A stretch of 60,020 nt of DNA, counting the filler, from Sluysia triapertura (Eukaryota), in the NCBI GenBank assembly GCA_046118255.1. It is 4 parts of 4 records of this genome, joined end to end, with 100 filler letters (N's around TTAATTAATTAA, not from the genome) between each part and the next. Parts side by side here need not be neighbours in the genome. Positions count along the whole stretch, not along the records: positions 18,583 to 32,543 come from JBJNIA010012538.1; 3 more parts are not named here. One strand, 5' to 3'. The translations under genes and the position numbers were made by a program. Shown one piece after another: positions 9,801-32,543 of the stretch (within the stretch, counting starts at the first letter, position 1; every line of letters begins with the position of its first letter). The notes beneath the pieces were generated by a model, which was not told the DNA's origin, did no database searches, and was given only the letters and a program-made list of their open reading frames with translations.

Positions 9801-12604
9801 TTACTTTAAATTGAGGTTTGTTTATGGATTGTTGGTGTGGATGTTGATTATAATAATGACAGTAACGACAGCTGTAAGTTAGAATGTTTTGTAAGAGTTA
9901 AAGTCTGACAATATTAATAACTGAAAGGTTAAGTTGGATCTATTTAGAATTTCATAAATTTACTATTTCAAGAGATAGTAATGAAGATGTGGGGATTGAT
10001 GAAATGTTGCATGATGTATGTTTTGATGTGTTGAAGATGAAATAATATAATCGGAGGTGAAGGACTGAACCACCACAATGAGTTTAAAAAGTAAAAGAGA
10101 TACTTAAAACATTTTACAATTGTTCTTAATCCTTTAACCAAGATCATAAAAGTTTTTTGTATTATTTTTATGCATCAATGCTGCCATCGTGCCATGATAA
10201 AAATCAAATCAGCTATCACCAGAGAGAAGCTATTAAAGAATTATTTGATTTCATATCTAAAATAGTCGTATTACGAACTGCAAGGTACATACGATCTTCA
10301 GTGGTGGAACCTGAACATCTATGTCATAAACATAATTGCATATTGTTCATCATGAGTTTTGTTTTTTGATAAAAAATATCCTAAACGAATTCTACAAACA
10401 TTATCAACAAATTTATTATGCAGATAATTGATTGTGAAGTTTTAATGCGATTTCTAAAACTATATATTCCGATATTATGTAATGTTTAGTTATATATCGA
10501 AGATAATCACATATAAGAATATATTGACTTAGTCAAGCCAGTAGTTAATATTTATAGAATATTTCGGGCGAATGTATGTTAAAAGTAATGAATTCATTAC
10601 CAACTGCTAACGTTTGTCAATGTGAATGATCATTAGTGAGATCTCAAAATGTTTTAGAACGCTTCGAAGTTCATGTAGGTTTTATTCGTAATTCACTAAG
10701 TGTAAATAATGTAACTACTGTAAAATGATTTTTATTGATCTTACATTACGTTTTATTTGTTTATTCGATTCTAGTAAAGGGAAGTGGAGTCCACACCTCA
10801 TAAATGTTTAAATTTAAATTTTGTAAATGCTAAAATTTTTAAATTTGAATTCGAATCAGATTTATTTCAAAAATCTTAACTTTAAATTGGCAGATAATGA
10901 TATGTGCCCTTAGATTAATAAGGTATATGTTCATGTTGATGCTATTAACAAAATGGTTAAACGTGTAAGAAAAAGTTTCAGATTAATGGATATAAAATAT
11001 GTCAGTAGTTAACTGCATAACAGGAATTTAATCTGTGCGATAAAGTAATACTCGCTCGCATTTGTATTATTAGATATTTAGTGTTATGCAAGACTGAACG
11101 CTTAATTAATGTACGAGGTCAACAAAATTCTGTCGTAAGACATAATCGCTAATCATGTTGTATCGTTATCTTTGTTGGGATCACCTAACTGTTGGATATA
11201 GAAAAAATGGGATGAATTCATGAAGATTTGATAGAAAATAATAGACCAAACATCTATAATCATGTTAGACATTAAAGAATACCTTAGAGATTCCGAAAAA
11301 TTTTGCAATGTTTCGCGATCCTTCTAGGAACTTGAAATTATTTTTAAACACTGTTTGAATCATCTTTGAACTTGTGAACATTGAAACCATTTAAGATCTT
11401 GTAAACTTTAAGAATCTTTGAAATCTGAATAAGCATTTAAGACTGTTGGGATAAAATTATTGTAATTGATAACAAAAACAATTTTGACACGTTAATAAGT
11501 AACATAGATAAGTAGGAAAATGGTGAAGGTTGAAGCACCTAGAATCTCCTGAATATATTATGAAACGCTTTAAGGTTCAAAATACACTAACGATAATAAT
11601 ACAATAATAATAATAATATTAATATTAATAGCTAAATAAACACCTGCCGGTCTTAATTAAAAATTATATATTATAAGAATTGAAAAAATACCGGCATAAA
11701 TAATTGAAATATAAAAAGTTTAACTACTATTGATCTATATTGATCTATTTTTTGAATTGACGAAAGTCTTTCTTGTATAGGATAATATTCTGTCGAACAA
11801 CATTTATTGTGATAATATAAAACTAACTTAACATCATTATCTGCGCGTGCCAGAGCATGGGGTTTCTGAAGCTTGAGTATTAAAAATACATTTAGATCGA
11901 TTTGATTAATTGCGTAAGTTAGGACTATCATTGGGTATTAAAGTATTTCTGTATAGTAGACGAAATAAATTTTGTATTAGGATATTCCTATAAATGCAGT
12001 TGTAATAACTTCCATTGAAACTGTCTTTATATCAATAGAGTTAACATTTCTCATCATATACTCGATTTTATCTTTATAGGAATTATGGTCAACTAAAATT
12101 AACTTCATTTTATTGTTGCTTATGATAAAATTTTTAACTCATTCGTAGTACAGCAATAAGTGATTCACTCCTCTTTATTACTATGTGTATTGTTGATTCT
12201 ACATTTACATTGTCGTTTAATGTTATCTTTTCATTTAAAAATTCTAATCCTGTAGGAGGATAAATCTGTTTCAAATGTATCATTCATAATTCGTTGCACG
12301 GCACTTGATTTACTAAAACGATAATCACATATTAAAATAACTTTATATAAAATGATCGTATTGATTATTATCTTGATTGTTCCGAATGAATTTTTAGATT
12401 TCAACTAATTATCTTAGTAAAATTTTTAAATGCCGCAAAGATTTTTGATTTTTTTACTTTTCTGATTTAATTAATGACTTAATTAATTATATTTATTTAT
12501 TAGCACGTTTAAATTACAGCTAACTCATATTTCGCAGGAGTATTGAAAAATACAGTATTAAATTAATGAATAGCACCTGGATGAGATTTAGTACTATTAC
12601 TGAA

Positions 12605-12647
<43 letters not shown>

Positions 12648-13866
12648 TTATTTATTTATTTATTTATTTATTATTTAGATGATTGTTTAACGTAAATTTG
12701 TATTTGAAGCTTGATATGCATAATTTTCTAAAATTCGGCCATTTTAAATTTAATGTTTATAATTAATATTTACCACACTGGGGTATACTTTTAGTTAAAT
12801 ATATTACGATTTAGTGAAATATGAGAATATTTAATAAGCAGAGAATTTATAGTTCAGAATTATGCGAATAACAAACAATAATGCTTATTTCATTTATTTC
12901 AGAGCATTTAACACAAACAATATTTCAAGATACATTAAGAACATAATTTATTTTTGAATTCAAGATTAATTTTACAATTAATACATAATTTAGTAATTGA
13001 ATGGTTGAAGTAGAATTTTCTTAACGAATTGATATTGTTACATTGAATGATTAGTAGAATAAATGCTTACCCAGTTGATGATTACGATCATGATGATGAT
13101 GATAGTATTGTCGGTTGTTGAAATTGGTCAATTGTTGATTGTTGTACGTTATGAGAGCAGTTTTTTTGTAAAAAATGAAATTCTGTTATGTTAAGGTTGT
13201 GCAATTAATGTATCTAGGATTAATTATTTGTTCGAGAGCTTCCGATGGTTTCGTTAGATGTCACTATCACAAGTAATTCTAAAATTGAAGATAAGGTTGT
13301 ATCAGACATGATACGTTTGAAGTTGAAAGTGATTTTTTTGTTCAGTAAGGTTTATTACAAACATAAGAATCGACTGGTTTGAAACGTATCAAAGGTTTTA
13401 AAAGTGTAAAATAAGTATATGAGTGACTAAAATGTCTAGTAATTTTATTGATGTTAAAGTGCATAAGTTAAATGTAACATTTTTGTGCATTAAGAGGGTT
13501 ATAATTTAGGTTGTTATGGGTACTTAAAATTAAATACGTTTGTTTCGTCTAATTTCTAATTTTATTGATTGTTCCGAATTGTCTAAATGAAAAGGAATTC
13601 ACCAAGAATGTGATCATGTTATTGAGGATATGGAATAAAAATTTGTAAGGTTTGTGCAGTGTTTTGTATAAAATATTTTTAAATAACTAGTATTTTACTA
13701 GGAATAAAGTTGTAGGTTATGTAGAATGAGCCACCACATTAACCAAATTTGAAGAAGTGGAGAGGATAAGAAATTGAGTGTTACTGAATTTTACAACTGA
13801 ATTATATTTTAATCTTGAAAAGACCATGTTTGTTTAGAAGAGTTTACGTGATACTGAAGGATTTCT

Positions 13867-14115
13867 TTATCTTTGATGGTTCACTGTGATGATTGACTGA
13901 GACCGTTGCTGGTTTGATTTTGTTTTTATTGTCGACAATGAACTGTATGACTTGAAGGACTGGTGTAGTGATGCTGTATTTTCTGTTTTTAACCAGACGA
14001 ATTTATTGTCCAGAATGTTTTTGGGTATATGAATATAAGAAGAATCGTTGTGAACCTGAGTTTTATTCAATTCGTTGAAATACTGCCGCAATAAAGTTGG
14101 TAAGGAGTGTTCCAC
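13867..14115 (-). mobile_element. Gypsy/Metaviridae pol (integrase C-terminal region) remnant
   Basis: 'IHIPKNILDNKFVWLKTENTASLHQSF' resembles the 'HIPKxL....VWLR.D....L..PY' segment preceding the GPY/F motif of Gypsy integrases; degenerate. Confidence 0.5.
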
Positions 14116-18582: not shown

Positions 18583-20043
18583 TATATATATGGATACAAT
18601 CATAAAAAGACAGGAAACAATAATATTATTAAAATAATTTTGGAGGTAAAATTTGGTAACAAGTATGATAAATTTTGATTGTAAGACTATTTGTTTGTGA
18701 AAATGTGTAGTTTTACGGAACTTGTATATTCATTTTATGTTTATTCTTTTAGACTGTGTTGCAGTTTGTTTAAGATTTTCTTTATGAGAAATGTGTTGTA
18801 TTATGCTGATGTTTGTCTAGAATTGTATTTTGTTGTGTTTCGATTGTGAGCTCACCACGGCATATATTAGCTCTATTATTATTGTATTTTGATGATAACT
18901 TTTATATTTAACCCTTTAAGTATGTGCCACGTCAATAAACGTTTTTGCTTAACTTCTGCGACAGCCGAGTGGCATGAATAAGCGCTCTGATGAATTTTCT
19001 TGTTTTACTAGCCAAATAACGCTTACTGCCGCTGCGTATATGCTGAGTATGCATTGTTTATATATGTTAGCGCTTGGCTAGATCAGTAGAATTATGAGAT
19101 ACATTTCAGAAATGTATAAAATATGATTAATAATCATGGATCAATTTTATCAGAAACGTTTCTCGTTGTACTGAAAATTATAGTGACATAAGATTATCGG
19201 TTTTCGGTTTTATTTCCGTAGAAATGTATTACATGTTATTTACGGGCTGCGTTTGCTTTTAAATTTGTAAAGTTTTTAAAATATTAAAAAATGCTTAAAT
19301 ATACAGAAACATTAATTTTTTTATTGGTTTATTTTTGGATTGTGTAAATTATCTGAAGATTTTTCAAATTCATGAAAAACAAAATATTGTATAACACATT
19401 GGCTTGGCTATATGAATAGTTCGTAGATATGTTCTTGTAACTTATTATTATGTTCTGTATAATATCATCAAATTATAATTATAATAATATCCTGCTTTAA
19501 ATAACATTTTCAACTTTGTTTTTCATTGAGTTTTGTAAATATCATGTGATCATTGCTACTAAGAAGTAATAATAATTACAATAACAAAAAAGTCATTAAT
19601 AAAAATAGATATAATTATATTAAATAGGTCATATTTACATAAACAATTTGTTTTGCTTGATGCATTTATTACGAATAGTATAAACATTTATTAATTAATA
19701 TTACCGAATTAATAATAATTTATTAAAACATAATTTAAATTACAAATTGTTTTAAAATTTGTTGACACATTTTAAATGTAACGTGAACAAATATATTCAG
19801 TTTTAAACAATTTCAAGCTTCGTCATAAAGATCTGTAATTAAAGAACTTTGATAATAATTAATAAAATATAATGATTAATATTATTATGTTACATAATAT
19901 TGTGGATTTTTTGGATCATCAAAGATAAATATTTATTCTAAAACGAGTACATTTAGAACTTTCACTATGAAAGAAGGGATTAAAAAGGACGAATTTTAAT
20001 TTTATTGCCTCTGTAAGTAGAGTTAGAATTTATAATTTTAATG

Positions 20044-20106
<63 letters not shown>
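20044..20106. repeat. (AAT)n microsatellite
   Basis: Directly visible; similar tracts at ~12606, ~25501 and ~40848. Confidence 0.95.
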
Positions 20107-22330
20107 TTAATATTAATCTAAATTGAACTAATATCAATTATAAAGTATGTTCACAAATATACTTAAAACAAATCATTCTTTATAATATTCCGAAATAGAA
20201 ATAACTCTTGTCTTTTCATGATTATTTCACAATTTTCCAGTTATTTGACATTCTCTTGTTATTTAAATTATGTAAAACCCATTATCTATCTTAATTTTTT
20301 AAATTATTATTAGCATAAAGACATTCATTTTAGTTTTCGAATCTTTATTATTTCCAAGATAATGCTTATTTAGATAAGCATTTATTAATTAATAATTAAT
20401 AATTTCGAATTGTAACCATTTAAGATAAGGAGTTATATAAATTAGGGAACTCTTTTAAGTGTTACATTCATTTTTATGCTTATTGTTTATTCATATTATC
20501 CTGAATTTTCATTAAATAAAATATGATATTATATGATATTATCTTAGATAGAATTATATCTTTTCAAAAAATCGATAATTTATTAGTTTTCTTACAATAG
20601 AAAATTAATAGAATGTTTTACTTATTCCAAATTCAAAAATTTAAATTATTAACCATCACTATTGTCATGTATCATATTTTTGTCAAGAAAATACTTCATA
20701 TATTCATGAATGAAGATGTATTGAGTCTGAAATAAACGAAATAAAATAAACGATTATATTTAAACAAACAGATAATTAATGTAAGATGGTATCACATTTC
20801 TTTGTAAATAAAAATTATTTCTATCAAAATATATTATCGGTATTTATAATTGGATGTGGCAATCCAACCTATCAGTATCGAGTTGTATTTAACATTGTTT
20901 CGATAAATTATTATTAAGTTTTACTTTTTATGTTTTATAAATAATAATACATTAATATTTATAATTTCACATTTTAATTGGTCTATATTTTGATAATAAT
21001 TACAAAACTAACTTCGATTATCTCAAAATGGAGAAACCACAGGGTACCATAAAGAAGGTCATTAAATATTTTATTTTATAATTTTATTATTGGTTTTAAC
21101 AAAGTTATTTTTTGAATTTAATTTTTGAGTAATTATTAAAAATTAATAATGGTTACAAATATATTTTAAATTGTGTTGATGTATATTTAAGATTGACTTG
21201 TACAATTGTTGATCATCAAAATTTAATAGAATTATTTGGCACTTGAAAGTAAAAATAATGATATCAATAATAATTATAATAACACTAGTGATGACAATAA
21301 TGAAAAAACAATTGTTGCAAATTATTGAGTTCTAAAATTTTATGTTGAAATGTAAGATGCATAAAATATTTCTTGCATGATTAAAAGGTTTTGAGGGGCG
21401 CAGTAAGTGTCGTATGTGCTTTGACATATGTTACTGATGCAATAAAATCATGGGTAATGTTTTGGGTCACTATAAACATTTAGTCTTCAAATATATCCAA
21501 TCGAAAGATGACTTAAATAATACTTATCAAATTTTAATTAACAATATGAAAGCAGTTCATTTTCTTACTGAAATTTTAGGTAATTCAAACATGAAAGAAT
21601 AAGACTTTGTCGTACAACAAAGAAATTAATTTGTGATTAGATAAACAAAGTTATGTAGGACAAATTGTTTTAGATTTAAGACAATATCAATTACAATTTG
21701 AATAAATAGAAAAATACAGAGAGCAATTTAATTGTAAGATTGAAATTATGATTAGTGATAGTGATAGTTATTTAAAATACACTAATGTTAATTGAGATAC
21801 TTTATTAAATGGATGTATCCAATCACAGTACCGACCATTCAATGATATAATAAGTAAATTTAAAGTGGAAAGTCCAAACATTATTCCAATCTGTCTAGTA
21901 TTAGTAAACATAATAAAGTATAATAAAAAAAGATCATTAAAAGGTATTCACAAATCGTATAAACAATGCAAGGACTGTTCTTTCAGTTCCAAATTCAGTT
22001 AGTTCCCATTAAATTTAGAAAAATCACTCTCTCAAATACTAACGACAAAAGAACAATGTAACATTGATGACAATGATTGTGATGATTCCGATTTGTATTT
22101 AATAAATGTTTGTATTACATTATTTATTTTACTTTATGATGAATTATTTTAAATTTGATACTAACATAAGTTCTATTGACATTCAAGAAATGTGATTATG
22201 TATTAAGAATGCAGCATCGATTTCTGTTATTATTTATTAATATTTAATAATTGATAGCAACACCATTATTATAAGATGAGCTTGGTATCACTCGGAGATG
22301 ATATGCAATTCATAAACAATGTAATCGCCA

Positions 22331-23964
22331 TCACTTCAAAATTGTATGTTTTGGAAAATTTATTATTTTGTGTTGTAATATTAGCTTAAAGATTTTAAAA
22401 ATTTGAAATGATAACTTGTAGGTTTTTGGATCTTTAACAAGATATGTTTTTAATGATTCAATATCGTAAAGATAAAATCGAGTTGTTTTTGATAAGGATT
22501 TTATGTTAGACTTCAGATTTTTAGGTTCGGATCTAGTAAGTAAATCAATTACGGTTATAATAAAATTTTGTACAAGGATCTGACGGATGACGGAGTGAGA
22601 TGTTATTAGGTTATGAGTCGTGTTTATTGTTAAGTATGTACATTTATATATAGGTACAGTTTGATCTTTTAAGTTGTCAAAAGACAATGACTTACGTTTC
22701 AAACTGGTTTTTGTCGTATTAATCATGTAATGATACGAAATTCTTTTTAAGAAATAATAGATTTAATTTTGGCATTTTAATTTCTAAAATAAATATAAAA
22801 ATTCTAAGTACAATACATTTATTATATGAAATGGGAATTTTAAATTTTGAGATAAAGTTTTCTCTTATTACTTCTTTGTCCAACACTACGACCAGTTGCT
22901 CCCATTGATCCATTCTTTAATTTGGTTGACTAAAATATAAATCAAAAAAGATATAGAACAAAAACTTACGTACAATATCTTATCGCAAAGAGTATAGTTC
23001 ATTAATTTGCATAAATTCACTTTGCTCATCAATTTATCTATCTCTTGATTTAGTGTTGATGACGTTTTCAATTGTTGACGATGTTGAACTCATTAATTCG
23101 TAGTAGAATATACTTGTAATGATAGATCTTAAAATCATTCGAAGCATTAATTTTTGATATTGAACTAAAGCGATGTACTGCTGTGTCTAGGAACAGTTCG
23201 ATTACATCTTTTCGCATTATAGTGCTGGCCTTTGGTCGGATTGACAGATAATAATCAATAAGTTCGTGTTTATACTCTTTTGATATATTGTGTAGGTCAC
23301 TCATGATCCGTATACTTGGGACTAAATCTTTATTGTCATAATTATCGAATTCGTCTTCGAGTACTCTCTCAATAACTAACTGCTCATTCAGGATTAGGGA
23401 TATTTGATAAACTTTTTGTTGAACTAGTTCAATGATTAAAATTTTTTGAAAATAGCATCGTATACGTCTCAGTAAGGCAAGCTGATTTTGTCAGATTTAT
23501 ACTATTAACTAAATCGATTAAATCTTTTGAACATAGTTTATTGGATCCACTATTCCCATTATTGTTCATTTCTGGTGTTGCATTATAACTTGTAATTTTA
23601 ACTTCATCATAAGCATTTGTTCTAAATGTTTCGTAGAAGAGATTATCTTCATTCTCTAGAGTACTACAAAAATTACATTGATTATGTTCGAAGACATTAG
23701 AAAGAGTAATTATTTGGATGGTAGCTTAATTGTCATTAAGATAAGATAATAGGCCATAAACATTTGAAATTTGCTTTGTTTTTTTCTTTCGATCTAAACA
23801 TAATTCATTAAACGATTAGAATCCTTTATATATTTCTTTGCCAACAAATTACTACTTGGTTTAAGAATATCATTATCAACAGTAGTACATTTTACTAAAG
23901 TTTGGATATAAAATGATTCCATAGAATTTCTAATAATGAGTCGATTCGGAGAAGTTTTTGCCAT
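22331..23964 (-). pseudogene. Long (~540 codon) intronless orphan ORF broken by stops and frameshifts
   Basis: ATG at 23964 (MAKTSPNRLIIRNSMESFY...) continues through isolated stops and frameshifts into track ORFs 23068..23304, 22886..23071, 22719..22913 and 22331..22726, which overlap end to end. No domain recognised. Confidence 0.6.
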
Positions 23965-25496
23965 GATTTAATGTGAATCAATATTCGGCGTCAAAAATTG
24001 CAAACGAAAAACAAATCTATTTGACTGTAAAGGGTCTTTTTTATTAACAAAACAAATGAGTTGTCACACTTTGCTTAATATTTTTGATTGATAAATAAAA
24101 TGTGAGTCCAATCAGAGTCTCAGAGATAATATTTAATTATTGTAAATCTGCCAAAAAAGTGAGTGATTTTTGTTTTTTGATTAAAATTCTATTTTTAGTG
24201 GTGTGATATCATTAGTCATCCAATCAGGCCTCCGAGAAAAATCGATGAGGAAAATAGGTCCTGATTGAATGATAAGTAATTTAATTTTAGTACACAAATG
24301 TGGTTGCTGAACCAACTACTATCAGTAGTACATTAATTAGATTATTTTGACAGACATTAACTACTGATAGTGGTAGATACTAGGTTAATAATAAAATTAA
24401 TGACATTAATAACAAAATAATAATATTATTATTAATGCCATTTTATTTAAAATAAACACAAACGTCTTTTGACCAATTTCTACATGATCTTGCTCTTTCT
24501 ATTTTCTTTTATTTCTGACATAAAAATTGAAAAGATAAAACGTTTGGTATACTGTGAAGGAACAACGGTAACGTGTTATACGGTGTTTAGGTTATCGTTG
24601 CTGCCTTCACCATAGAAATGAATTCTTTAAAGCTCTATTAAATTTATTTTTTGAAAATGAGAGAATGGTTTGAGCTGCAAGTAAAATAACGAATGCTGGA
24701 ATAAACTCTTGAGATTCATTCAAGGTTTATAATTGGAAATACGGTTTATACATTGAATGTAGTGGTTTAAAATGCTTGTTAATAGTTTATTTGATTTGAA
24801 AGACAATTACAAAATAAATCTTAGCGTGGTTACAATGTTATTGAAGGGTGTTGATAATGATTATGTGTAGAAACGATGGGTTTAAATTAGTGTGATTGAT
24901 CCGTGATTGTAGCGTAAATGTTTTCAGGTACTTGTTAGAGTTGTTGGATAGTGTGAATGCGTTTGTAATTTAAATATTATGTGTTATGATTGTAACTTGG
25001 TTTGAGAACATTATGAATTGTTTTTTGTTTTAATTATCGAAGTATGGTGTGAGATAAATGATTGAGAGTATTCTACGAGTTGTCTTTAAGAAGTATATAT
25101 TGTTAAATTATTATGAATGTCGAATGCTGTTTTTGGTGGATCAGTTAATGTAATTGGATAGTATGAAATGTGATTAATTTAGATGTTATGTTTTTTGTAA
25201 ACTTATTGTTGTGGTTTGAATATGTTAAGTATGATTGACACTTAAAATTGTGGGATTTTTAGAAAATATAGAGTTGATAATCGATACAATACCTATATTC
25301 AGTAAAGTTGGCATTTTACATTAAAACTTCGTAAATACGAGATTTAATGTTGTGTTTTTAACTGCACAAATAAATTTTAATATCCTATGTGAATTTATTT
25401 GTAATGTTAAATCCTATTTTGTAAAAGTTTGTAATTAAATCAAAATTTTGTGCAAAATACTCATTACTATTATAAATTTATCAGTTTTATTAAAAT

Positions 25497-25530
<34 letters not shown>

Positions 25531-25965
25531 GTGGAATTATTATTATATTACTAATATTATATTACTAATTATATTATAATATTATATTACTAACATTCAA
25601 TTAAAAAGTACAAATTAGAAAAATTGTAAATGAAAAAATTCTAAACTCGTAAATAAAATCAATGACCTCACAGTTAGAATTGTGGTGGCCAACCTAATAA
25701 CTTAAAATTTTAATTTTACACTACACATAAAAATCACACTTCATAATATTTCTTATTTTATTTTTTTCAGAAATCTTTAAAATTTTCGAAACTTTAAAAC
25801 ATTTTAACAATATTAAAATCATAGTCAGCATCTTAAGTTATCAAATGTACATTTCAAGTTCACAATTCTTCAACACTCAATCATTAATATCATTGAAAAG
25901 CATTAAATTCACAATTAATTCAAAATTAATTTTTAGTTATTTTCTGGTTATGCCACGGTAAGTGT

Positions 25966-26406
25966 TTATGGATCATTCTAAAAACATACAACAAATAAAA
26001 ATGATTTAAGTTATTAAAATTCGAATAAAAATATATAATGATTACCATTTCACACTTCATCATAGAATCGTCTGGAACTTCAATAACATAAGCAATTGTA
26101 ACGTTGTCATCATTAATGGCTAGTTTTTGTAAATAATGTTTGACTCCCAAAGTCGATAAGATGGATTCTGTTCTATGATAATGATCCACGAAGCAAGCTG
26201 AATAACCAGGAACGTGATGAAATTCAAAAATTATGTGGTAGTAGATGCAGTTCTTGCCGTGCTTGTAACATTTACCAGTTGGGGTAGTTTCATATGGGCA
26301 ATGAGTCATAGGTAAAGTTTTGTTACCGTTATAGAACAACTTGAAATGCTCTTCCTTTGAATTATTATTTGACGATTTTGTCTCTAATGTTTTTTTTATT
26401 AGTCAT
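25966..26406 (-). pseudogene. Atypical CCCH (C-x9-C-x6-C-x3-H) zinc-finger gene, copy A
   Basis: CPYETTPTGKCYKHGKNCIYYH at 26300-26235. Predicted GT..AG intron 26045-25978; the next exon stops after 3 codons. The upstream ATG at 26406 is out of frame across a homopolymer run. Confidence 0.6.
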
Positions 26407-28393
26407 GACTAATGAATTGACATCTACTATATTTGTATTAACTAATTTGTGAAAAGCTAAAAATATATTAATAGAAATTTCTGTAACTTGATCATTAACC
26501 GTTACAATTAATCTATGATTACTTTAATTTTTATTTGCGATATCATAATTCAACGAATAAACATGATTTATACTAAATTGTTTAGATGGAGTTGTATAAT
26601 TTTGTTCAAGCAAACTTTTTGTACTGATGTTTCGTACATGTACTAATTTAACATAAAAGTAATTACTTTGATAATTTAAGATGACTTAATATATAATTGT
26701 GGAATAGTGAGCAAATGTTTTAAAAGAGTTCTTAAATGTAGATTGATGGTTTTGACTGAAGGTAAAGTTTGGATGTTGAAAGCCTGTGAATTTAAAATGT
26801 TTTGAGGTATGAAAAATGGTTTAGTGAATCTGAAAGAAATAAAATGTAAAAAAGGTTTTGATAGAAAATACGTAATATGTTATAGAATGTGGTTTTATGT
26901 GTTATATGTTAAATTAAATTTGAGATATTTTGAATTAATTTTTAAGTAAATCGTTGATGATTTTCGGTATTGAATATGCGATTTTGATGTTATGAAAGTT
27001 TAGAATGTTTGCAAGTAATAACAATTATGAAATATTCTGAAGAGTAATTTTGTTATATGTTATCAAAATGTAAATGTTAAAATCTAAAAACATTTTCATA
27101 TTATTCGTATTGTAAATAATAAAATCTAAAAACATTTTTGTATTAGTTTTAAATAATAAAATTTCATAAATAATAAAAGTTTAAAAATTTTTTAATAATT
27201 AATAATCAAGGAAGTTATATTTATTGAACGGATATTAGTATCATAAATAATCTATTTGCTTATTTATTGAACGGATATTGCTAAATAATTATTTATTTTC
27301 GAAAAGGAAATTAATATTCATTTTAAAAATTTTATTAATAAACATTTAAATTTAACGAAAATCAATATCCAAAGTTCCAAGAGTATAAAAGGTATAATTT
27401 AATGATTAAAATTGATAACAAAAATATAGAAAAGTTTTGGTAATATATTTGGCGAAGAAAAGTTCGTTAGACAATTTATTCGAATCAAATACTTGATTGT
27501 TCGCTAAGTCACGATTGGAATATTCGATTGTTTATCAAGATTATAAGCGTCAGTCAGACAATTTGTTTATATACCAAGTCATAGCGTCACGTGGAACATT
27601 GAATCAATTTTTTGTCAAGTATCATTTGGCTCTTGGAACTAATCTGATTTTGATTACGTAAGCTTATATTACTTAAGTTTTTTCGACCATGATACGCGGT
27701 CTCAAAATCTCACTTAAAATCTTCATTAATTTTAGTAAAAACCCAAAGATAACCTCTGGGTCAAATTCTAACTTAAAATATAAAAAGTTTAAAATTCTAT
27801 TTTTATTATAACTGCGTTTTTATTTTTGAATCTATTGTAACTATACGAAATTTTATCTAATTTTGTTTATAATAAAATTTCCAGTTTATATTGCTTCTTA
27901 TTTCATTTATTAAAGTTGTAAAATTGCAATTAAATTTATAAATTGATTAAAATAAAAGTATTACGAAAATAAAGAGTTAGGAATAAATTATTAAGGAAAA
28001 TAACTGTAGCATAGACAAGAGTTTACTAACCTTCGATTGTGATTAAAATTATACATTAAGGGCTAAATTTATTAGAGTAAAGACATTAGGAATATAGAAA
28101 ACACGAAGAATAAATCGTTAAATAAAAGAGTTCTTAGCCTCGCACGAACAAAAGAGCTTTTTGACCTTCAACTTTGAGTATTTTAAATCCTACGTAAACT
28201 TCCTTCCAGTTAAGATAAAGCGTTTAACGTAGGCGGACCCTATCTTCTAAATTTCTTTTTATAATTGTTCGTATAGGTATAAAACCGAACAAAAATAAAA
28301 TTTTAGGATATTGGGTTTGTCACCAGTTGAAGAAAATTTAATTGTATTATACATACGATCGCAAATGAATATGCTTAAATATAATGAAGCCAG

Positions 28394-28919
28394 ATGCAAA
28401 CAAAATATAATTTCCGATCTGATCAACCGCAAAACTATCATTTTAAACCTGTTGTTTCTAATCCAAGTATAACTTCTGGGATTTACAAAATTTTGGCACA
28501 ATGTCCATCTCAGCTAAACGAATCCGGAATATATCTCAAATTTGGTGCATCTTGCCGCTATTTTCAAAATGTTTTAGAAATAAATTATGATGGCCTAAGA
28601 AATCAAATTAGTAATGAACATTTGGAAGGTTTGAATGATCTGCTCATACCTATACAAAGTAACACAATCAGCCATAACCCAAAAATCAGTAAAATTCACA
28701 TTCAAGCCATGAACAATATTGCATCTTCTAGTCAGGTTAACGAGTCAAGATTTAAAGTAATTTTTAATATTCATGTTATAAAAATATATGATCTTTATTT
28801 CTATTTATTATTAGGAGTCTAACAAGAAAATCCACGTCGTGCCGAATACAAGCAGTTTAATTCATAATCGCATAAAATTAACAATTTTTGTGCAGTGTCA
28901 CTTTAAACTCAATTTGTAA
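28394..28919 (+). pseudogene. Atypical CCCH zinc-finger gene, copy B (two ligands mutated)
   Basis: CPSQLNESGIYLKFGASCRYFQ at 28502-28567 (C>Y and H>Q are each one-nucleotide changes). Predicted GT..AG intron 28757-28814. Confidence 0.55.
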
Positions 28920-31900
28920 TAAATTTTCCTTCTTTGTCATTTTATTGAATAAAAAAGTTAATGATAAAATGTTTAAATTAAATCTTGTTAACTCGTTTGG
29001 TAAAAGGAAAATAAAAAATGTTAATTTAATTTATATTAATTTCAATCAAAGAAGTGACAATAAGATTATAACTAAAATAATTATAATTCTACAATACCCA
29101 AAAGAACTAACTATTATAAATAGCGATTTCAGACATTAAAACAGTTTTCTAAATCTATTCTAATTGTGACTTAAAAGTTGAATAGTTTAAATAACATAAT
29201 TTTATTCGTAATGTCATATACTTATCAAATCAACAAATCAAATAGAATTAGAGGATCAAAGAATTTAATTAATTAGGTTTTTTCGGATCATTTTTAAAGA
29301 AAACATATGTTGCAACAAATTATTTAATTATCTTTGCGAAAAAATTCGTTAGTCTGAAATTTTTATAAGATTAAATATTTTCCAGAAAACAATAAAGTTT
29401 TAACTTGTACAAAGTGAACAGTATTTGTAAAATTCATTACACAAAAGATTTATTAAATAACCCTCGAATTAACAGTTTTGTTGTATTAAAAACTTTGTAT
29501 TTTAATTATAACATTACGAAATATTGATTTTGTGTTAGTAAAACTTGAATTGCTAATATAAATTTTCGTTCATTAATTATTATAATTTTCCTCATATCTT
29601 TAGACGTGAACCTAACTTATGTATTTAAAAACTTCTTTCGAAATTTATAGTGATAATAAATGACTGGCACAATTATAATAAATCAAAATTATTCTAATTA
29701 AAGTTCCTTGTAAATTGTATCTCATTTAAATTACAAGAAACAAATCTCGCTATAATAACGGAATTCAATCATTCGAGCATATTGCTTCTTAATGACCTTC
29801 AATTGTAGTGAACTCCACATTTTCACAGCAAACGTTTCTTACATAAACAAAACACTAAATAAATTGCTCGATTCATAAAATGAAGTATCAATTTACATAA
29901 GTACAAATTCATATTCAATCTGGTATTGGTATTTTCGCCAATGTTGCGATTATTATCGTACTATATGAAATAAGTTTAGAGCATGAAATATGATTAGATA
30001 TATCTTTTTATTATACATTACAAACTAATTATATTTATAGGTTTTGTTTTATTTAATTTTCATATTTTATGTTACGATATGTTGAATTGCATTATATTCA
30101 GCAATATTTAAATGAAAATATTAATTTTGTTTTAGCTCGAACGACTTCATTTTTTTAATATGTTGTCCTAATATATTTAAAAATCATTTCGAGTTTCGAA
30201 ATTTTTGTGCAAGTATCAATTCAAATCCTTTGATATGTAAGGAATCGAGCTCTGATCATTCTTGTTCAATAATCAATTATGCCAAATGAAGCAGACTAGT
30301 TATCAAACTAATCAAGCTACTTTTCGAAATTTTTAAAGAAACTTACGCTATATCTATAGGTATATTTATACTTGTCATTTTACTTCTGATAACATTTTAT
30401 AATAATTTTTTTGCGTTGTTCAAATTCTTTGTTATTGATTTTGTAAATGTTTTAAAATTTGTATTTGTGAATATTTTGATTAGGTTAACTTATTTATAAA
30501 TAAATAAATATTTTAAGTTTTGTTGAATTTAAAATTTCCAATAATTTAAATATTTCTTCGCCATCACCAAACCACTAAAGCTTGCATTATCTTTCGCTGA
30601 CACATATGAGTTGGCCCTTAAGTATATAAGACCAAAAATATCATAGTGGGCTTACAAACAAGAAGTAAAACAAAACATATTAACAAAGCCTAAAATTTTC
30701 ACAGTAACAATTAAAACAAAACCTAATAATCCTCACAAACAAAGAAAGAGATGATGATGTTAATATATACAGTCGATTATGATAAATAAAGTTAAATCCC
30801 ATGATAAAGTTATGTTAATAATTAAAGTTTATGCTGAAAATAAAGAGATTTTGATGATGAAGGTTGAAGTTATTATCAAAGATGTTATTGCAATTTAAAC
30901 ATCACATGTAAATAATTTAATTTAATTTAATTTTTCAAAAAAATTATTATAAATATAATTATCAACTTATTCAGTAATAGATTTTTACAAAAATTTTAAT
31001 TATCACTTGAAATTCAAATTGTAAATGATTCAAAAAAGACATTTTAAATATGAACATTACTTCTTCCAATCATGGGTTTTTACATAAATACTTAATCGCG
31101 TTATTAAAATTAAAAGTGTAAATAATTCAATATTTTTGTCAAAAAAGATATTGTAATTAAATATATCCTATTGATTAACTGTAGAATATTAAATAATATT
31201 TCAACTATATTATGTAAGACAAAATCTATACTAATATATTTGTGTCTAATATCAAATTTACGATATTCTCATTCTATAATACAAATGTATTAGTAAATAG
31301 TTATCAAATGGCAAACAAAACATTCTTATTCTCCAGAGATGTACTTCTAACAATTTACAGCCAAACGCATCACTACAAATTTATCAATGTGCTGCAATCC
31401 TTTATTAATCTCATAATTTTCTTTTAAAATTTTTATTCTTTTTAATTCTAATATCGGCTTAAGGCTCCAAAACACTTAACTAATTCATTAAAAGAATAAT
31501 TTAATGAACGAGAAACAAGGTAACAGTAATGACATTAAATAATCAAAAGTCATTGAATAAAAAAGGATTAAATTCTACTCTGTAGATCATATTCCGGACG
31601 TATGCGATACTCTTGTGTAAATAATACAAAGGTACAAAGGTTAAATAATATTATCGAAGGTCAAAGGCCAAATATTAGATTTTAAACAAAATATTAGATT
31701 TTAAAGTTTAAATTTCAAATTAAATATATTAAAGTTTAATTGTTTAAATCCATTGGACATTTTATAATTAAATCAATTTAATTAAATAAGAATAATTATT
31801 GGAAATTTTATGAAATAATTTAATTAAATAAGAAAATTGTTGGAAATTTTATAATCAAACGTTATCCAAGTTAGTGTAATTATTGATAATATTATATTAT

Positions 31901-32543
31901 TTTATTTATTAAAAACATTACTAAAATTAATATTAATATTAAATCTATAATTATTAAAAATAATAAGCATTATTAAAATTAAAAATTAAAATTATTTGCT
32001 TCAATTTTTTGTTTTAATGCTTTCAAGGGCAGTTCTAAACAAGTATATAAGGTGACACATTTAAACATCTTCACACAAATATTTATACGATATATTCAGT
32101 TAACGTTTTATACTTTTAAAATCTTTACCGAGTGATTTTGGACAGCTTCATCTAAGTATACGTACAGTTTCTTGCGATAATTGGAAAATTTTTCGACTAC
32201 AAATTTTGCAAAGGAAGTGCTATTCTTCGTTAGTTTTTATATTTAAGTTTTTAGCAATTTATAAAATTTCCTTGCTAAAATATTACGTAAACTTCATTTT
32301 CTAATTTTCCCGCTATCATTTAGAGATAGCGCATTAAAATCCACATAAAAATTTACTTCTAGATTATATTTGAAATAATCTATCCTAATATTTTATTATT
32401 TTATTATAATTTAATTGATCACTATTGTACATTTTTCATTTTATTAATAAAGTTTGGATATTTTATTATAAATTTTCTGATATTAGTAACAGTTCCTTAG
32501 CGAATCGGAGTAAACTTATTAAAATGTTCACTTTCATTGAACC

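What the first reader, a model, noticed from the sequence alone, without database searches (positions are those of the whole stretch)
25978..28814. Head-to-head CCCH genes keep a phase-0 intron exactly 63 codons after the finger despite near-total sequence divergence
Seen: in copy A the GT donor (26045) follows 63 codons after the His; in copy B the GT donor (28757) follows 63 codons after the His-equivalent Gln. Both predicted introns are short (68 and 58 nt) and end in TTAG. The 63-aa segments share only a hydrophobic pattern (IIFEF vs NVLEI). The two genes point away from each other across ~2 kb within one contig. Inference: an old inverted duplication of a spliced gene with a length-conserved domain after the finger, possibly under a bidirectional promoter (ATTGG ~27515, GTCACGTG ~27586).
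Basis: partly seen in the sequence, partly recalled or inferred. Interest (0 to 1): 0.7.

Follow-up and report, generated by a model that had tools for sequence, protein, structure and literature searches.

The report
Diverged orphan zinc-finger gene pair
Two small, divergently oriented genes in a very AT-rich, repeat-laden eukaryotic contig are probably old paralogs of a lineage-specific CCCH-type zinc-finger family that kept one intron position; this is ordinary gene-family evolution, and no RNA data were available to prove the splicing.

Summary
In both copies a GTAAT donor lies exactly 63 codons after the last finger position, and the predicted introns are 68 and 58 nt and end in TTAG.

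Both reading frames are longer than chance allows. Copy A has a real C-x9-C-x6-C-x3-H motif. Copy B has lost two of the four ligands here, but most of its paralogs in the one public run still have the second Cys at the position aligned with A.

The evidence that A and B are related is:
- the finger, which is strong;
- an in-register hydropathy pattern in the 63-aa tail, which is weak (p about 0.01-0.05);
- the shared donor position (p about 0.014).

An old duplication of a spliced gene is therefore the best reading, at about 0.55.

Several points weaken the rest of the interpretation:
- No RNA run exists, so splicing is unproven.
- A high-copy repeat starts 6 nt after A's donor, so A's 68-nt intron and 3-codon second exon are doubtful. 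A longer intron with a B-like second exon is possible.
- The 2-kb spacer is largely made of interspersed repeats, and its CCAAT and CACGTG motifs occur at chance frequency, so a bidirectional promoter is unsupported.
- Neither protein has a relative in any database searched.
- Both genes are multi-copy.

Interest is low.

The parts
26046..26309 (-). Copy A, exon 1 from the first in-frame ATG (MTHC...) to the predicted donor. The frame is open upstream to 26402.
   Evidence: An open frame of 158 codons, longer than any frame in 300 shuffles. G+C is 0.357 against 0.241 for the piece.
26235..26300 (-). Copy A's CCCH-type finger, C-x9-C-x6-C-x3-H.
   Evidence: It is the only such pattern in the six frames of the piece, and 1.3% of shuffles contain one. 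Pfam zf-CCCH_UNK matches at E 0.002 and 18.4 bits, below the 31.1-bit cut-off.
26390..26406 (-). An ATG (26406-26404) followed by an A8 run (26397-26390), one base out of frame with copy A's open frame.
   Evidence: Three-frame translation. If the run length differed, 35 or 36 residues would precede the first Cys, against 36 in B. This is inference only.
25978..26045 (-). The donor at 26045-26040 is credible, but the rest lies in a repeat.
   Evidence: Sequence. Summed depth is about 122 at 26054, about 490 at 26023 and about 6,500 in the 25864-26004 bin, and a contig match ends at 26039.
25681..26039 (.). A high-copy interspersed repeat immediately 3' of copy A's donor.
   Evidence: Depth is 4,000-6,500 against 10-19 for single-copy sequence. 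Loose ends occur at 25681 and a joint at 26039. The terminus at 25683-25717 resembles 28291-28325.
25601..25693 (-). An alternative second exon for copy A (30 codons plus TAA), following the acceptor TTATTAG|G.
   Evidence: It has the same acceptor 8-mer as B and carries T-I-F-x-x-C-x-F at residues 23-30, as in B's second exon. The in-register score has p 0.015. This is weak evidence, because its first 13 nt belong to the repeat terminus.
28394..28756 (+). Copy B, exon 1 (121 codons from the ATG to the predicted donor).
   Evidence: An open frame of 144 codons against a second-longest maximum of 113 in shuffles. G+C is 0.322.
28502..28567 (+). Copy B's degenerate finger (C-x9-Y-x6-C-x3-Q). Codon 47 (28532-28534, TAT) is TGT in most paralogs.
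   Evidence: BLASTP against A gives 25% identity over 32 aa, pairwise E 9e-5. At 28533, A>G accounts for 46.8 of 71.8 depth in X1 contigs, which changes Y47 to C.
28757..28814 (+). Copy B's predicted 58-nt phase-0 intron (GTAATT...TTATTAG).
   Evidence: G+C is 0.121, flanked by exons at 0.32. No RNA evidence is available.
28815..28919 (+). Copy B's predicted second exon (34 codons plus TAA).
   Evidence: It is in frame after the acceptor and has G+C of 0.324.
26403..28393 (.). The spacer between the two 5' ends, largely made of interspersed repeats.
   Evidence: Depth peaks are 4,500-10,900 at 26710-27132, 2,700 at 27697-27837 and 14,300 at 28120-28260. CCAAT at 27514 and CACGTG at 27588 occur at chance frequency.

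Best explanation
A and B are diverged members of a lineage-specific, multi-copy family of small two-exon proteins. Each has about 36 residues, then one CCCH-type finger with the spacing C-x9-C-x6-C-x3-H, then a 63-residue tail, then a phase-0 intron and a short last exon. An old duplication placed the two copies head-to-head. The intron position and the exon length were inherited from the common ancestor, while the sequence outside the finger drifted almost beyond recognition. Copy A keeps all four zinc ligands and would bind zinc and, like other CCCH fingers, probably single-stranded RNA; that function is inferred, not shown. Copy B in this window has lost two ligands (Cys to Tyr, His to Gln), and its paralogs differ from it mostly by amino-acid changes, so it is probably decaying or no longer works as a finger. 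A's original 3' end has been altered by a repeat inserted 6 nt after the donor.
For: Both open frames exceed shuffles, and exon and intron G+C differ sharply. The CCCH pattern is rare by chance and gives a weak Pfam CCCH hit. The atlas offers CCCH clusters only as low-score leads. The ungapped alignment anchored at the donors has z = 4.2, driven by the finger. Tail hydropathy is in register, with r = 0.28, shuffle p = 0.013, the best of 62 shifts. The donor coincidence has p of about 0.014. Most B paralogs have Cys at the position aligned with A's second Cys. Summed depth of 120-240 over both coding parts, against 10-19 for single-copy contigs, indicates several paralogs at 90% identity or more.
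Against: There is no RNA evidence of transcription or splicing. Similarity outside the 22-residue finger is marginal (63-aa tail p = 0.047 by BLOSUM, N-terminus none). MAFFT prefers a gapped alignment of the tails. No homologue was found anywhere, so no third sequence tests the alignment. The structure models are too poor to compare. The listed differences in B's paralogs are 10 non-synonymous to 2 synonymous, which shows no purifying selection. The finding was picked post hoc from a large scan.
Confidence: 0.55

Rival explanations
1. The whole block of about 3.5 kb (roughly 25621-29137) is one repeated or mobile unit, present in about ten copies, and A and B are its cargo or its own open frames. 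On this reading they are not host genes that share a regulatory region. Their conservation of structure would reflect the unit's copying history.
For: Depth never falls below about 118 from 26005 to 29106, while the flanks are at 23-69. One single-copy-depth contig joins 25620 directly to 29138. Both proteins are orphans. The differences between paralogs are mostly non-synonymous.
Against: No terminal inverted repeats or other transposon ends were seen. No transposase, integrase or reverse-transcriptase domain was found in any open frame. The joint rests on one contig with 33 nt on its shorter side. Depth is a sum over contigs and is inflated by nested repeats.
Confidence: 0.2
2. A and B are unrelated. 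B is an independent orphan open frame or pseudogene, and both the finger-like similarity and the equal distance to a GTAAT are coincidence picked out by a reader who was scanning for patterns.
For: Identity is only 25% over 32 residues. B gives no Pfam hit and no CCCH lead in the atlas. tblastn of A against the piece does not recover B. The tail similarity is marginal.
Against: Three separate lines of evidence point the same way: the finger score, Cys at the aligned position in B's paralogs, and the donor coincidence at p of about 0.014. In-register hydropathy adds to this.
Confidence: 0.15
3. The two copies are paralogs, but both are dead pseudogenes in a repeat-rich region and neither is spliced or expressed today.
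For: B has lost two zinc ligands. An ATG upstream of A is one base out of frame across an A8 run. A repeat abuts A's donor. The neighbouring gene also changes frame at an A6 run.
Against: Both frames remain open for 144-158 codons in sequence where stop codons are frequent. A keeps all four ligands and an in-frame ATG three codons before the finger. The frame shifts at homopolymer runs could be assembly errors.
Confidence: 0.1

Closest known systems
CCCH-type zinc fingers in the broad sense (C-X4-15-C-X4-6-C-X3-H; Pfam zf-CCCH PF00642 and the Unkempt-like PF25427)
   Same: Copy A has C-x9-C-x6-C-x3-H, with Gly before the second and third Cys and an aromatic residue between the third Cys and the His. 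This fits the generalised definition used in family surveys (PMC2267713, PMC2873481, found). Its best Pfam match is zf-CCCH_UNK.
   Different: The score of 18.4 bits is below the curated cut-off of 31.1 bits. There is only one finger. The 63-residue tail matches no family. No homologue was found among 1.84 billion representative proteins. Copy B lacks two ligands.
TTP/TIS11 and the nematode PIE-1/MEX-5/POS-1-type tandem CCCH proteins (from established knowledge)
   Same: They are small CCCH proteins, and some of these families evolve fast and are lineage-expanded. Their fingers bind single-stranded RNA.
   Different: Those proteins have two fingers with C-x8-C-x5-C-x3-H spacing and a conserved lead-in. 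Here there is one finger with x9/x6 spacing and no lead-in.
Conservation of intron position and phase between old paralogs (a general, well-documented feature of eukaryotic gene families; from established knowledge)
   Same: The predicted phase and the aligned position are the same, while the protein sequence has diverged.
   Different: Here the introns are predicted only, and one of them is interrupted by a repeat.

Membership tests
CCCH zinc finger (generalised motif) | Three Cys and one His spaced C-X4-15-C-X4-6-C-X3-H | tested here: met
   Copy A has C-x9-C-x6-C-x3-H at 26300-26235. The definition is taken from PMC2267713.
CCCH zinc finger (generalised motif) | The same motif in copy B | tested here: not met
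   Copy B reads C-x9-Y-x6-C-x3-Q. Most paralogs have Cys in place of the Tyr. Whether any paralog has His in place of the Gln is unknown.
Pfam zf-CCCH_UNK (PF25427) | Score at or above the curated gathering cut-off | tested here: not met
   Copy A scores 18.4 bits against a cut-off of 31.1, with E 0.002. Copy B gives no hit.
CCCH zinc finger | Zinc coordination and RNA binding | not testable with these tools
   The single-sequence AlphaFold2 models have pLDDT 54 and 35.
Tandem CCCH (TTP/TIS11) family | Two fingers of C-x8-C-x5-C-x3-H about 18 residues apart | tested here: not met
   There is only one CCCH pattern in the six frames of the piece.
Paralogs with a conserved intron | Same phase and same aligned position of the intron | tested here: met
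   Both GTAAT donors are in phase 0, 63 codons after the aligned His or Gln. This rests on prediction only.
Paralogs with a conserved intron | Splicing shown by transcripts | not testable with these tools
   No RNA run contains this sequence. The one run consists of contigs that run through the donor at 28757 (record 7).
Bidirectional promoter pair | Divergent starts less than about 1 kb apart sharing one compact, unique promoter | tested here: not met
   The start codons are about 2 kb apart, the spacer is largely interspersed repeats, and the cited motifs occur at chance frequency. The transcription start sites are unknown.

The most novel reading that the evidence does not exclude
The roughly 3.5-kb block carrying the divergent A/B pair is a previously undescribed mobile or copy-number-variable unit of this genome. 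Its two open frames would be a fast-evolving pair of CCCH-derived proteins that always travel together, and one public contig would represent the empty site.
Probability: 0.1. Interest if true: 0.5.

Novelty: new member of a known kind. Interest (0 to 1): 0.2.

Why it matters
If the reading is right, this is one more case of intron position and exon length outlasting recognisable sequence similarity in a fast-evolving, lineage-specific gene family. That is useful as an annotation aid in an AT-rich genome where homology searches return nothing, but it does not challenge current understanding. The more practical results are corrections. Copy B's finger is degenerate in this copy, copy A's 3' end is invaded by a repeat, and the shared-promoter idea has no support.

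Tried and rejected
- **Homology searches.** All returned nothing: the word-index search with A and with B, phmmer of A against 1.84 billion representatives, PDB sequences, and metagenome contigs with A and with B.
- **Viral contigs.** A gave nothing. B gave two loci, L001 and L002. These are a chance 8-residue word match in the wrong frame, opposite a phage capsid gene, and were rejected.
- **Protein atlas.** It gave only sub-threshold leads for A, which were CCCH clusters at 0.76-0.84, and nothing for B.
- **Structure prediction.** Both models were too poor (pLDDT 54 and 35) to compare folds, so no fold search was run.
- **RNA features.** Rfam and tRNA scans of the piece were empty.
- **Repeat between A and B.** There is no DNA-level inverted repeat between them.
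- **Genetic code.** A ciliate code was considered and rejected, because there are no long TGA-only frames that make sense.
- The third word-index search was not spent on the neighbouring gene, because this genome's own proteins are evidently absent from that collection. Exons were searched separately by reference.
- **Organism.** It could not be identified.

Full report
**The sequence.** The piece (18583-32543) has 24% G+C and no tRNA or Rfam match. It has few long open frames. The four longest are 158, 144, 143 and 140 codons, whereas 300 shuffles of the piece give a longest frame of 89 codons on average (maximum 146) and a second-longest of at most 113. The organism could not be identified. 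Short candidate introns and the composition point to a eukaryote with an AT-rich, repeat-rich genome.

**Checking the observation.** A script confirmed every count.
- In copy A the finger is CPYETTPTGKCYKHGKNCIYYH, that is C-x9-C-x6-C-x3-H. Exactly 63 residues follow before GTAATC at 26045.
- In copy B the aligned stretch is CPSQLNESGIYLKFGASCRYFQ. Exactly 63 residues follow before GTAATT at 28757.
- The predicted introns are 68 and 58 nt and both end in TTAG.
- In the 365 nt after the His or Gln codon, A has one GTAA site and B has five. An exact coincidence therefore has a probability of about 0.014.
- G+C drops from 0.357 (A) and 0.322 (B) in the first exons to 0.147 and 0.121 in the predicted introns. 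In B it returns to 0.324 in a 34-codon in-frame second exon.

**Are A and B related?**
- BLASTP aligns 32 residues at 25% identity without gaps, with a pairwise E of 9e-5.
- An ungapped alignment anchored at the two donors scores z = 4.2 against shuffles. Nearly all of that comes from the 22-residue finger, which scores 41 against -23 +/- 11.
- The 63-residue tail is marginal (p = 0.047), and the N-terminal part shows nothing.
- Per-residue hydropathy of the two tails correlates in register, with r = 0.28 and shuffle p = 0.013.
- MAFFT, left to itself, inserts compensating gaps, so gap-free collinearity is likely but not proven.
- The most telling extra evidence came from the one public run that contains this sequence (X1, contigs, same or a very close genome). 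At 28533 most of the matching contig depth (46.8 of 71.8) reads G instead of A. This turns B's codon 47 from Tyr into Cys. That is the very position aligned with A's second Cys, so the B family has the same unusual C-x9-C-x6-C spacing, and this window's copy has lost it.

**What the proteins are.** A's motif fits the generalised CCCH definition C-X4-15-C-X4-6-C-X3-H used in family surveys (PMC2267713 and PMC2873481), and such a pattern occurs in only 1.3% of shuffled pieces. Pfam gives only a sub-threshold hit to the Unkempt-like CCCH model (E 0.002, 18.4 bits against a cut-off of 31.1) and nothing for B.

No search found a relative:
- the word-index search with A and with B;
- phmmer of A against 1.84 billion representatives;
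- PDB sequences;
- metagenome contigs.

Two viral-contig hits for B are a wrong-frame chance match over a phage capsid gene. The exons were searched one by one by reference.

**Context from the run.** Contigs identical to the window have a depth of 10-19. Summed depth over the coding parts of A and B is 120-240, so each has several paralogs at 90% identity or more. Parts of the flanks and the spacer reach 4,000-14,000. This has three consequences.
1. A high-copy repeat occupies about 25681-26039 and starts 6 nt after A's donor.
2. The 2-kb spacer is largely made of repeats. The cited CCAAT and CACGTG motifs occur at chance frequency. A shared bidirectional promoter has no support.
3. The listed differences between B and its paralogs are 10 non-synonymous to 2 synonymous, which gives no sign of purifying selection.

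**An alternative 3' end for A.** Beyond the repeat, on the minus strand, the string TTATTAG|G occurs at 25700-25693. It is the same 8-mer as B's acceptor and occurs four times in 28 kb. It opens a 30-codon frame ending at 25601.
- That frame carries T-I-F-x-x-C-x-F at residues 23-30, exactly as B's second exon does. The in-register score is 2 against -27 +/- 12, p = 0.015.
- This would make A's intron 352 nt long, still in phase 0, with a repeat inside it.
- Against this, the first 13 nt of that exon belong to the repeat's terminus, and a similar terminus lies upstream of B at 28291-28325.

I leave this open.

**Other loose ends.**
- An ATG at 26406 is one base out of frame with A across an A8 run. 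With a different run length, 35 or 36 residues would precede the first Cys, against 36 in B.
- The neighbouring gene (22334-23967, minus strand) also changes frame at an A6 run. These are either homopolymer errors in the assembly or real decay.
- One contig at single-copy depth joins 25620 directly to 29138, and depth is raised across the whole block in between. The A-spacer-B block may therefore itself be a repeated or copy-number-variable unit. No transposon ends or transposon proteins were seen.

**Verdict.** The most likely reading (about 0.55) is an old duplication within a lineage-specific, multi-copy family of small single-CCCH proteins, which kept exon length and a phase-0 intron position while the sequence diverged. 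Copy A is intact in its finger. Copy B is degenerate in this window. The function, RNA binding by the finger, is inferred from the family and not shown. Conservation of intron position between diverged paralogs is well known, so this is a new member of a known kind and of low interest.

Noticed in passing
window 22334-23967 (minus strand): A chain of open frames (57, 98, 140, 67, 65 and 143 codons) that overlap in different frames and give no Pfam hit. It is probably one orphan gene. The frame change at 23432-23490 falls at an A6 run with no fitting GT..AG, so it is either a pseudogene or a homopolymer error in the assembly.
   Followed up: partly
window 22930-22969 (minus strand): A clean 40-nt GTAAGT...TTTTAG candidate intron in the neighbouring gene. 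It suggests that very short introns are a feature of this genome.
   Followed up: no
window 25620 / 29138: One X1 contig at single-copy depth joins these two positions, skipping 3,517 nt that contain both genes. Depth is raised across the whole block. This could be an empty site or a copy-number variant of a 3.5-kb unit.
   Followed up: partly
window 25681-26039, 26710-27132, 27697-27837, 28120-28260: Interspersed repeats at hundreds to about a thousand copies (summed contig depth 2,700-14,300 against 10-19 for single-copy sequence). The terminus TAGGTTGGCCACCA at 25683-25696 (minus strand) recurs with 3 mismatches at 28312-28325 (plus strand).
   Followed up: partly
window 20033-20128 and 25499-25530: Microsatellites (TAA)n and (ATT)n.
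   Followed up: no
window 26390-26406 (minus strand): An ATG one base out of frame with copy A's open frame across an A8 run. A different run length would give A an N-terminal segment of 35 or 36 residues before the first Cys, against 36 in B.
   Followed up: partly
L001 and L002, 3001-3135: IMG/VR phage contigs that matched copy B through the word IYKILAQC. The match lies in a wrong frame opposite a capsid-like gene, so it is a chance hit.
   Followed up: yes
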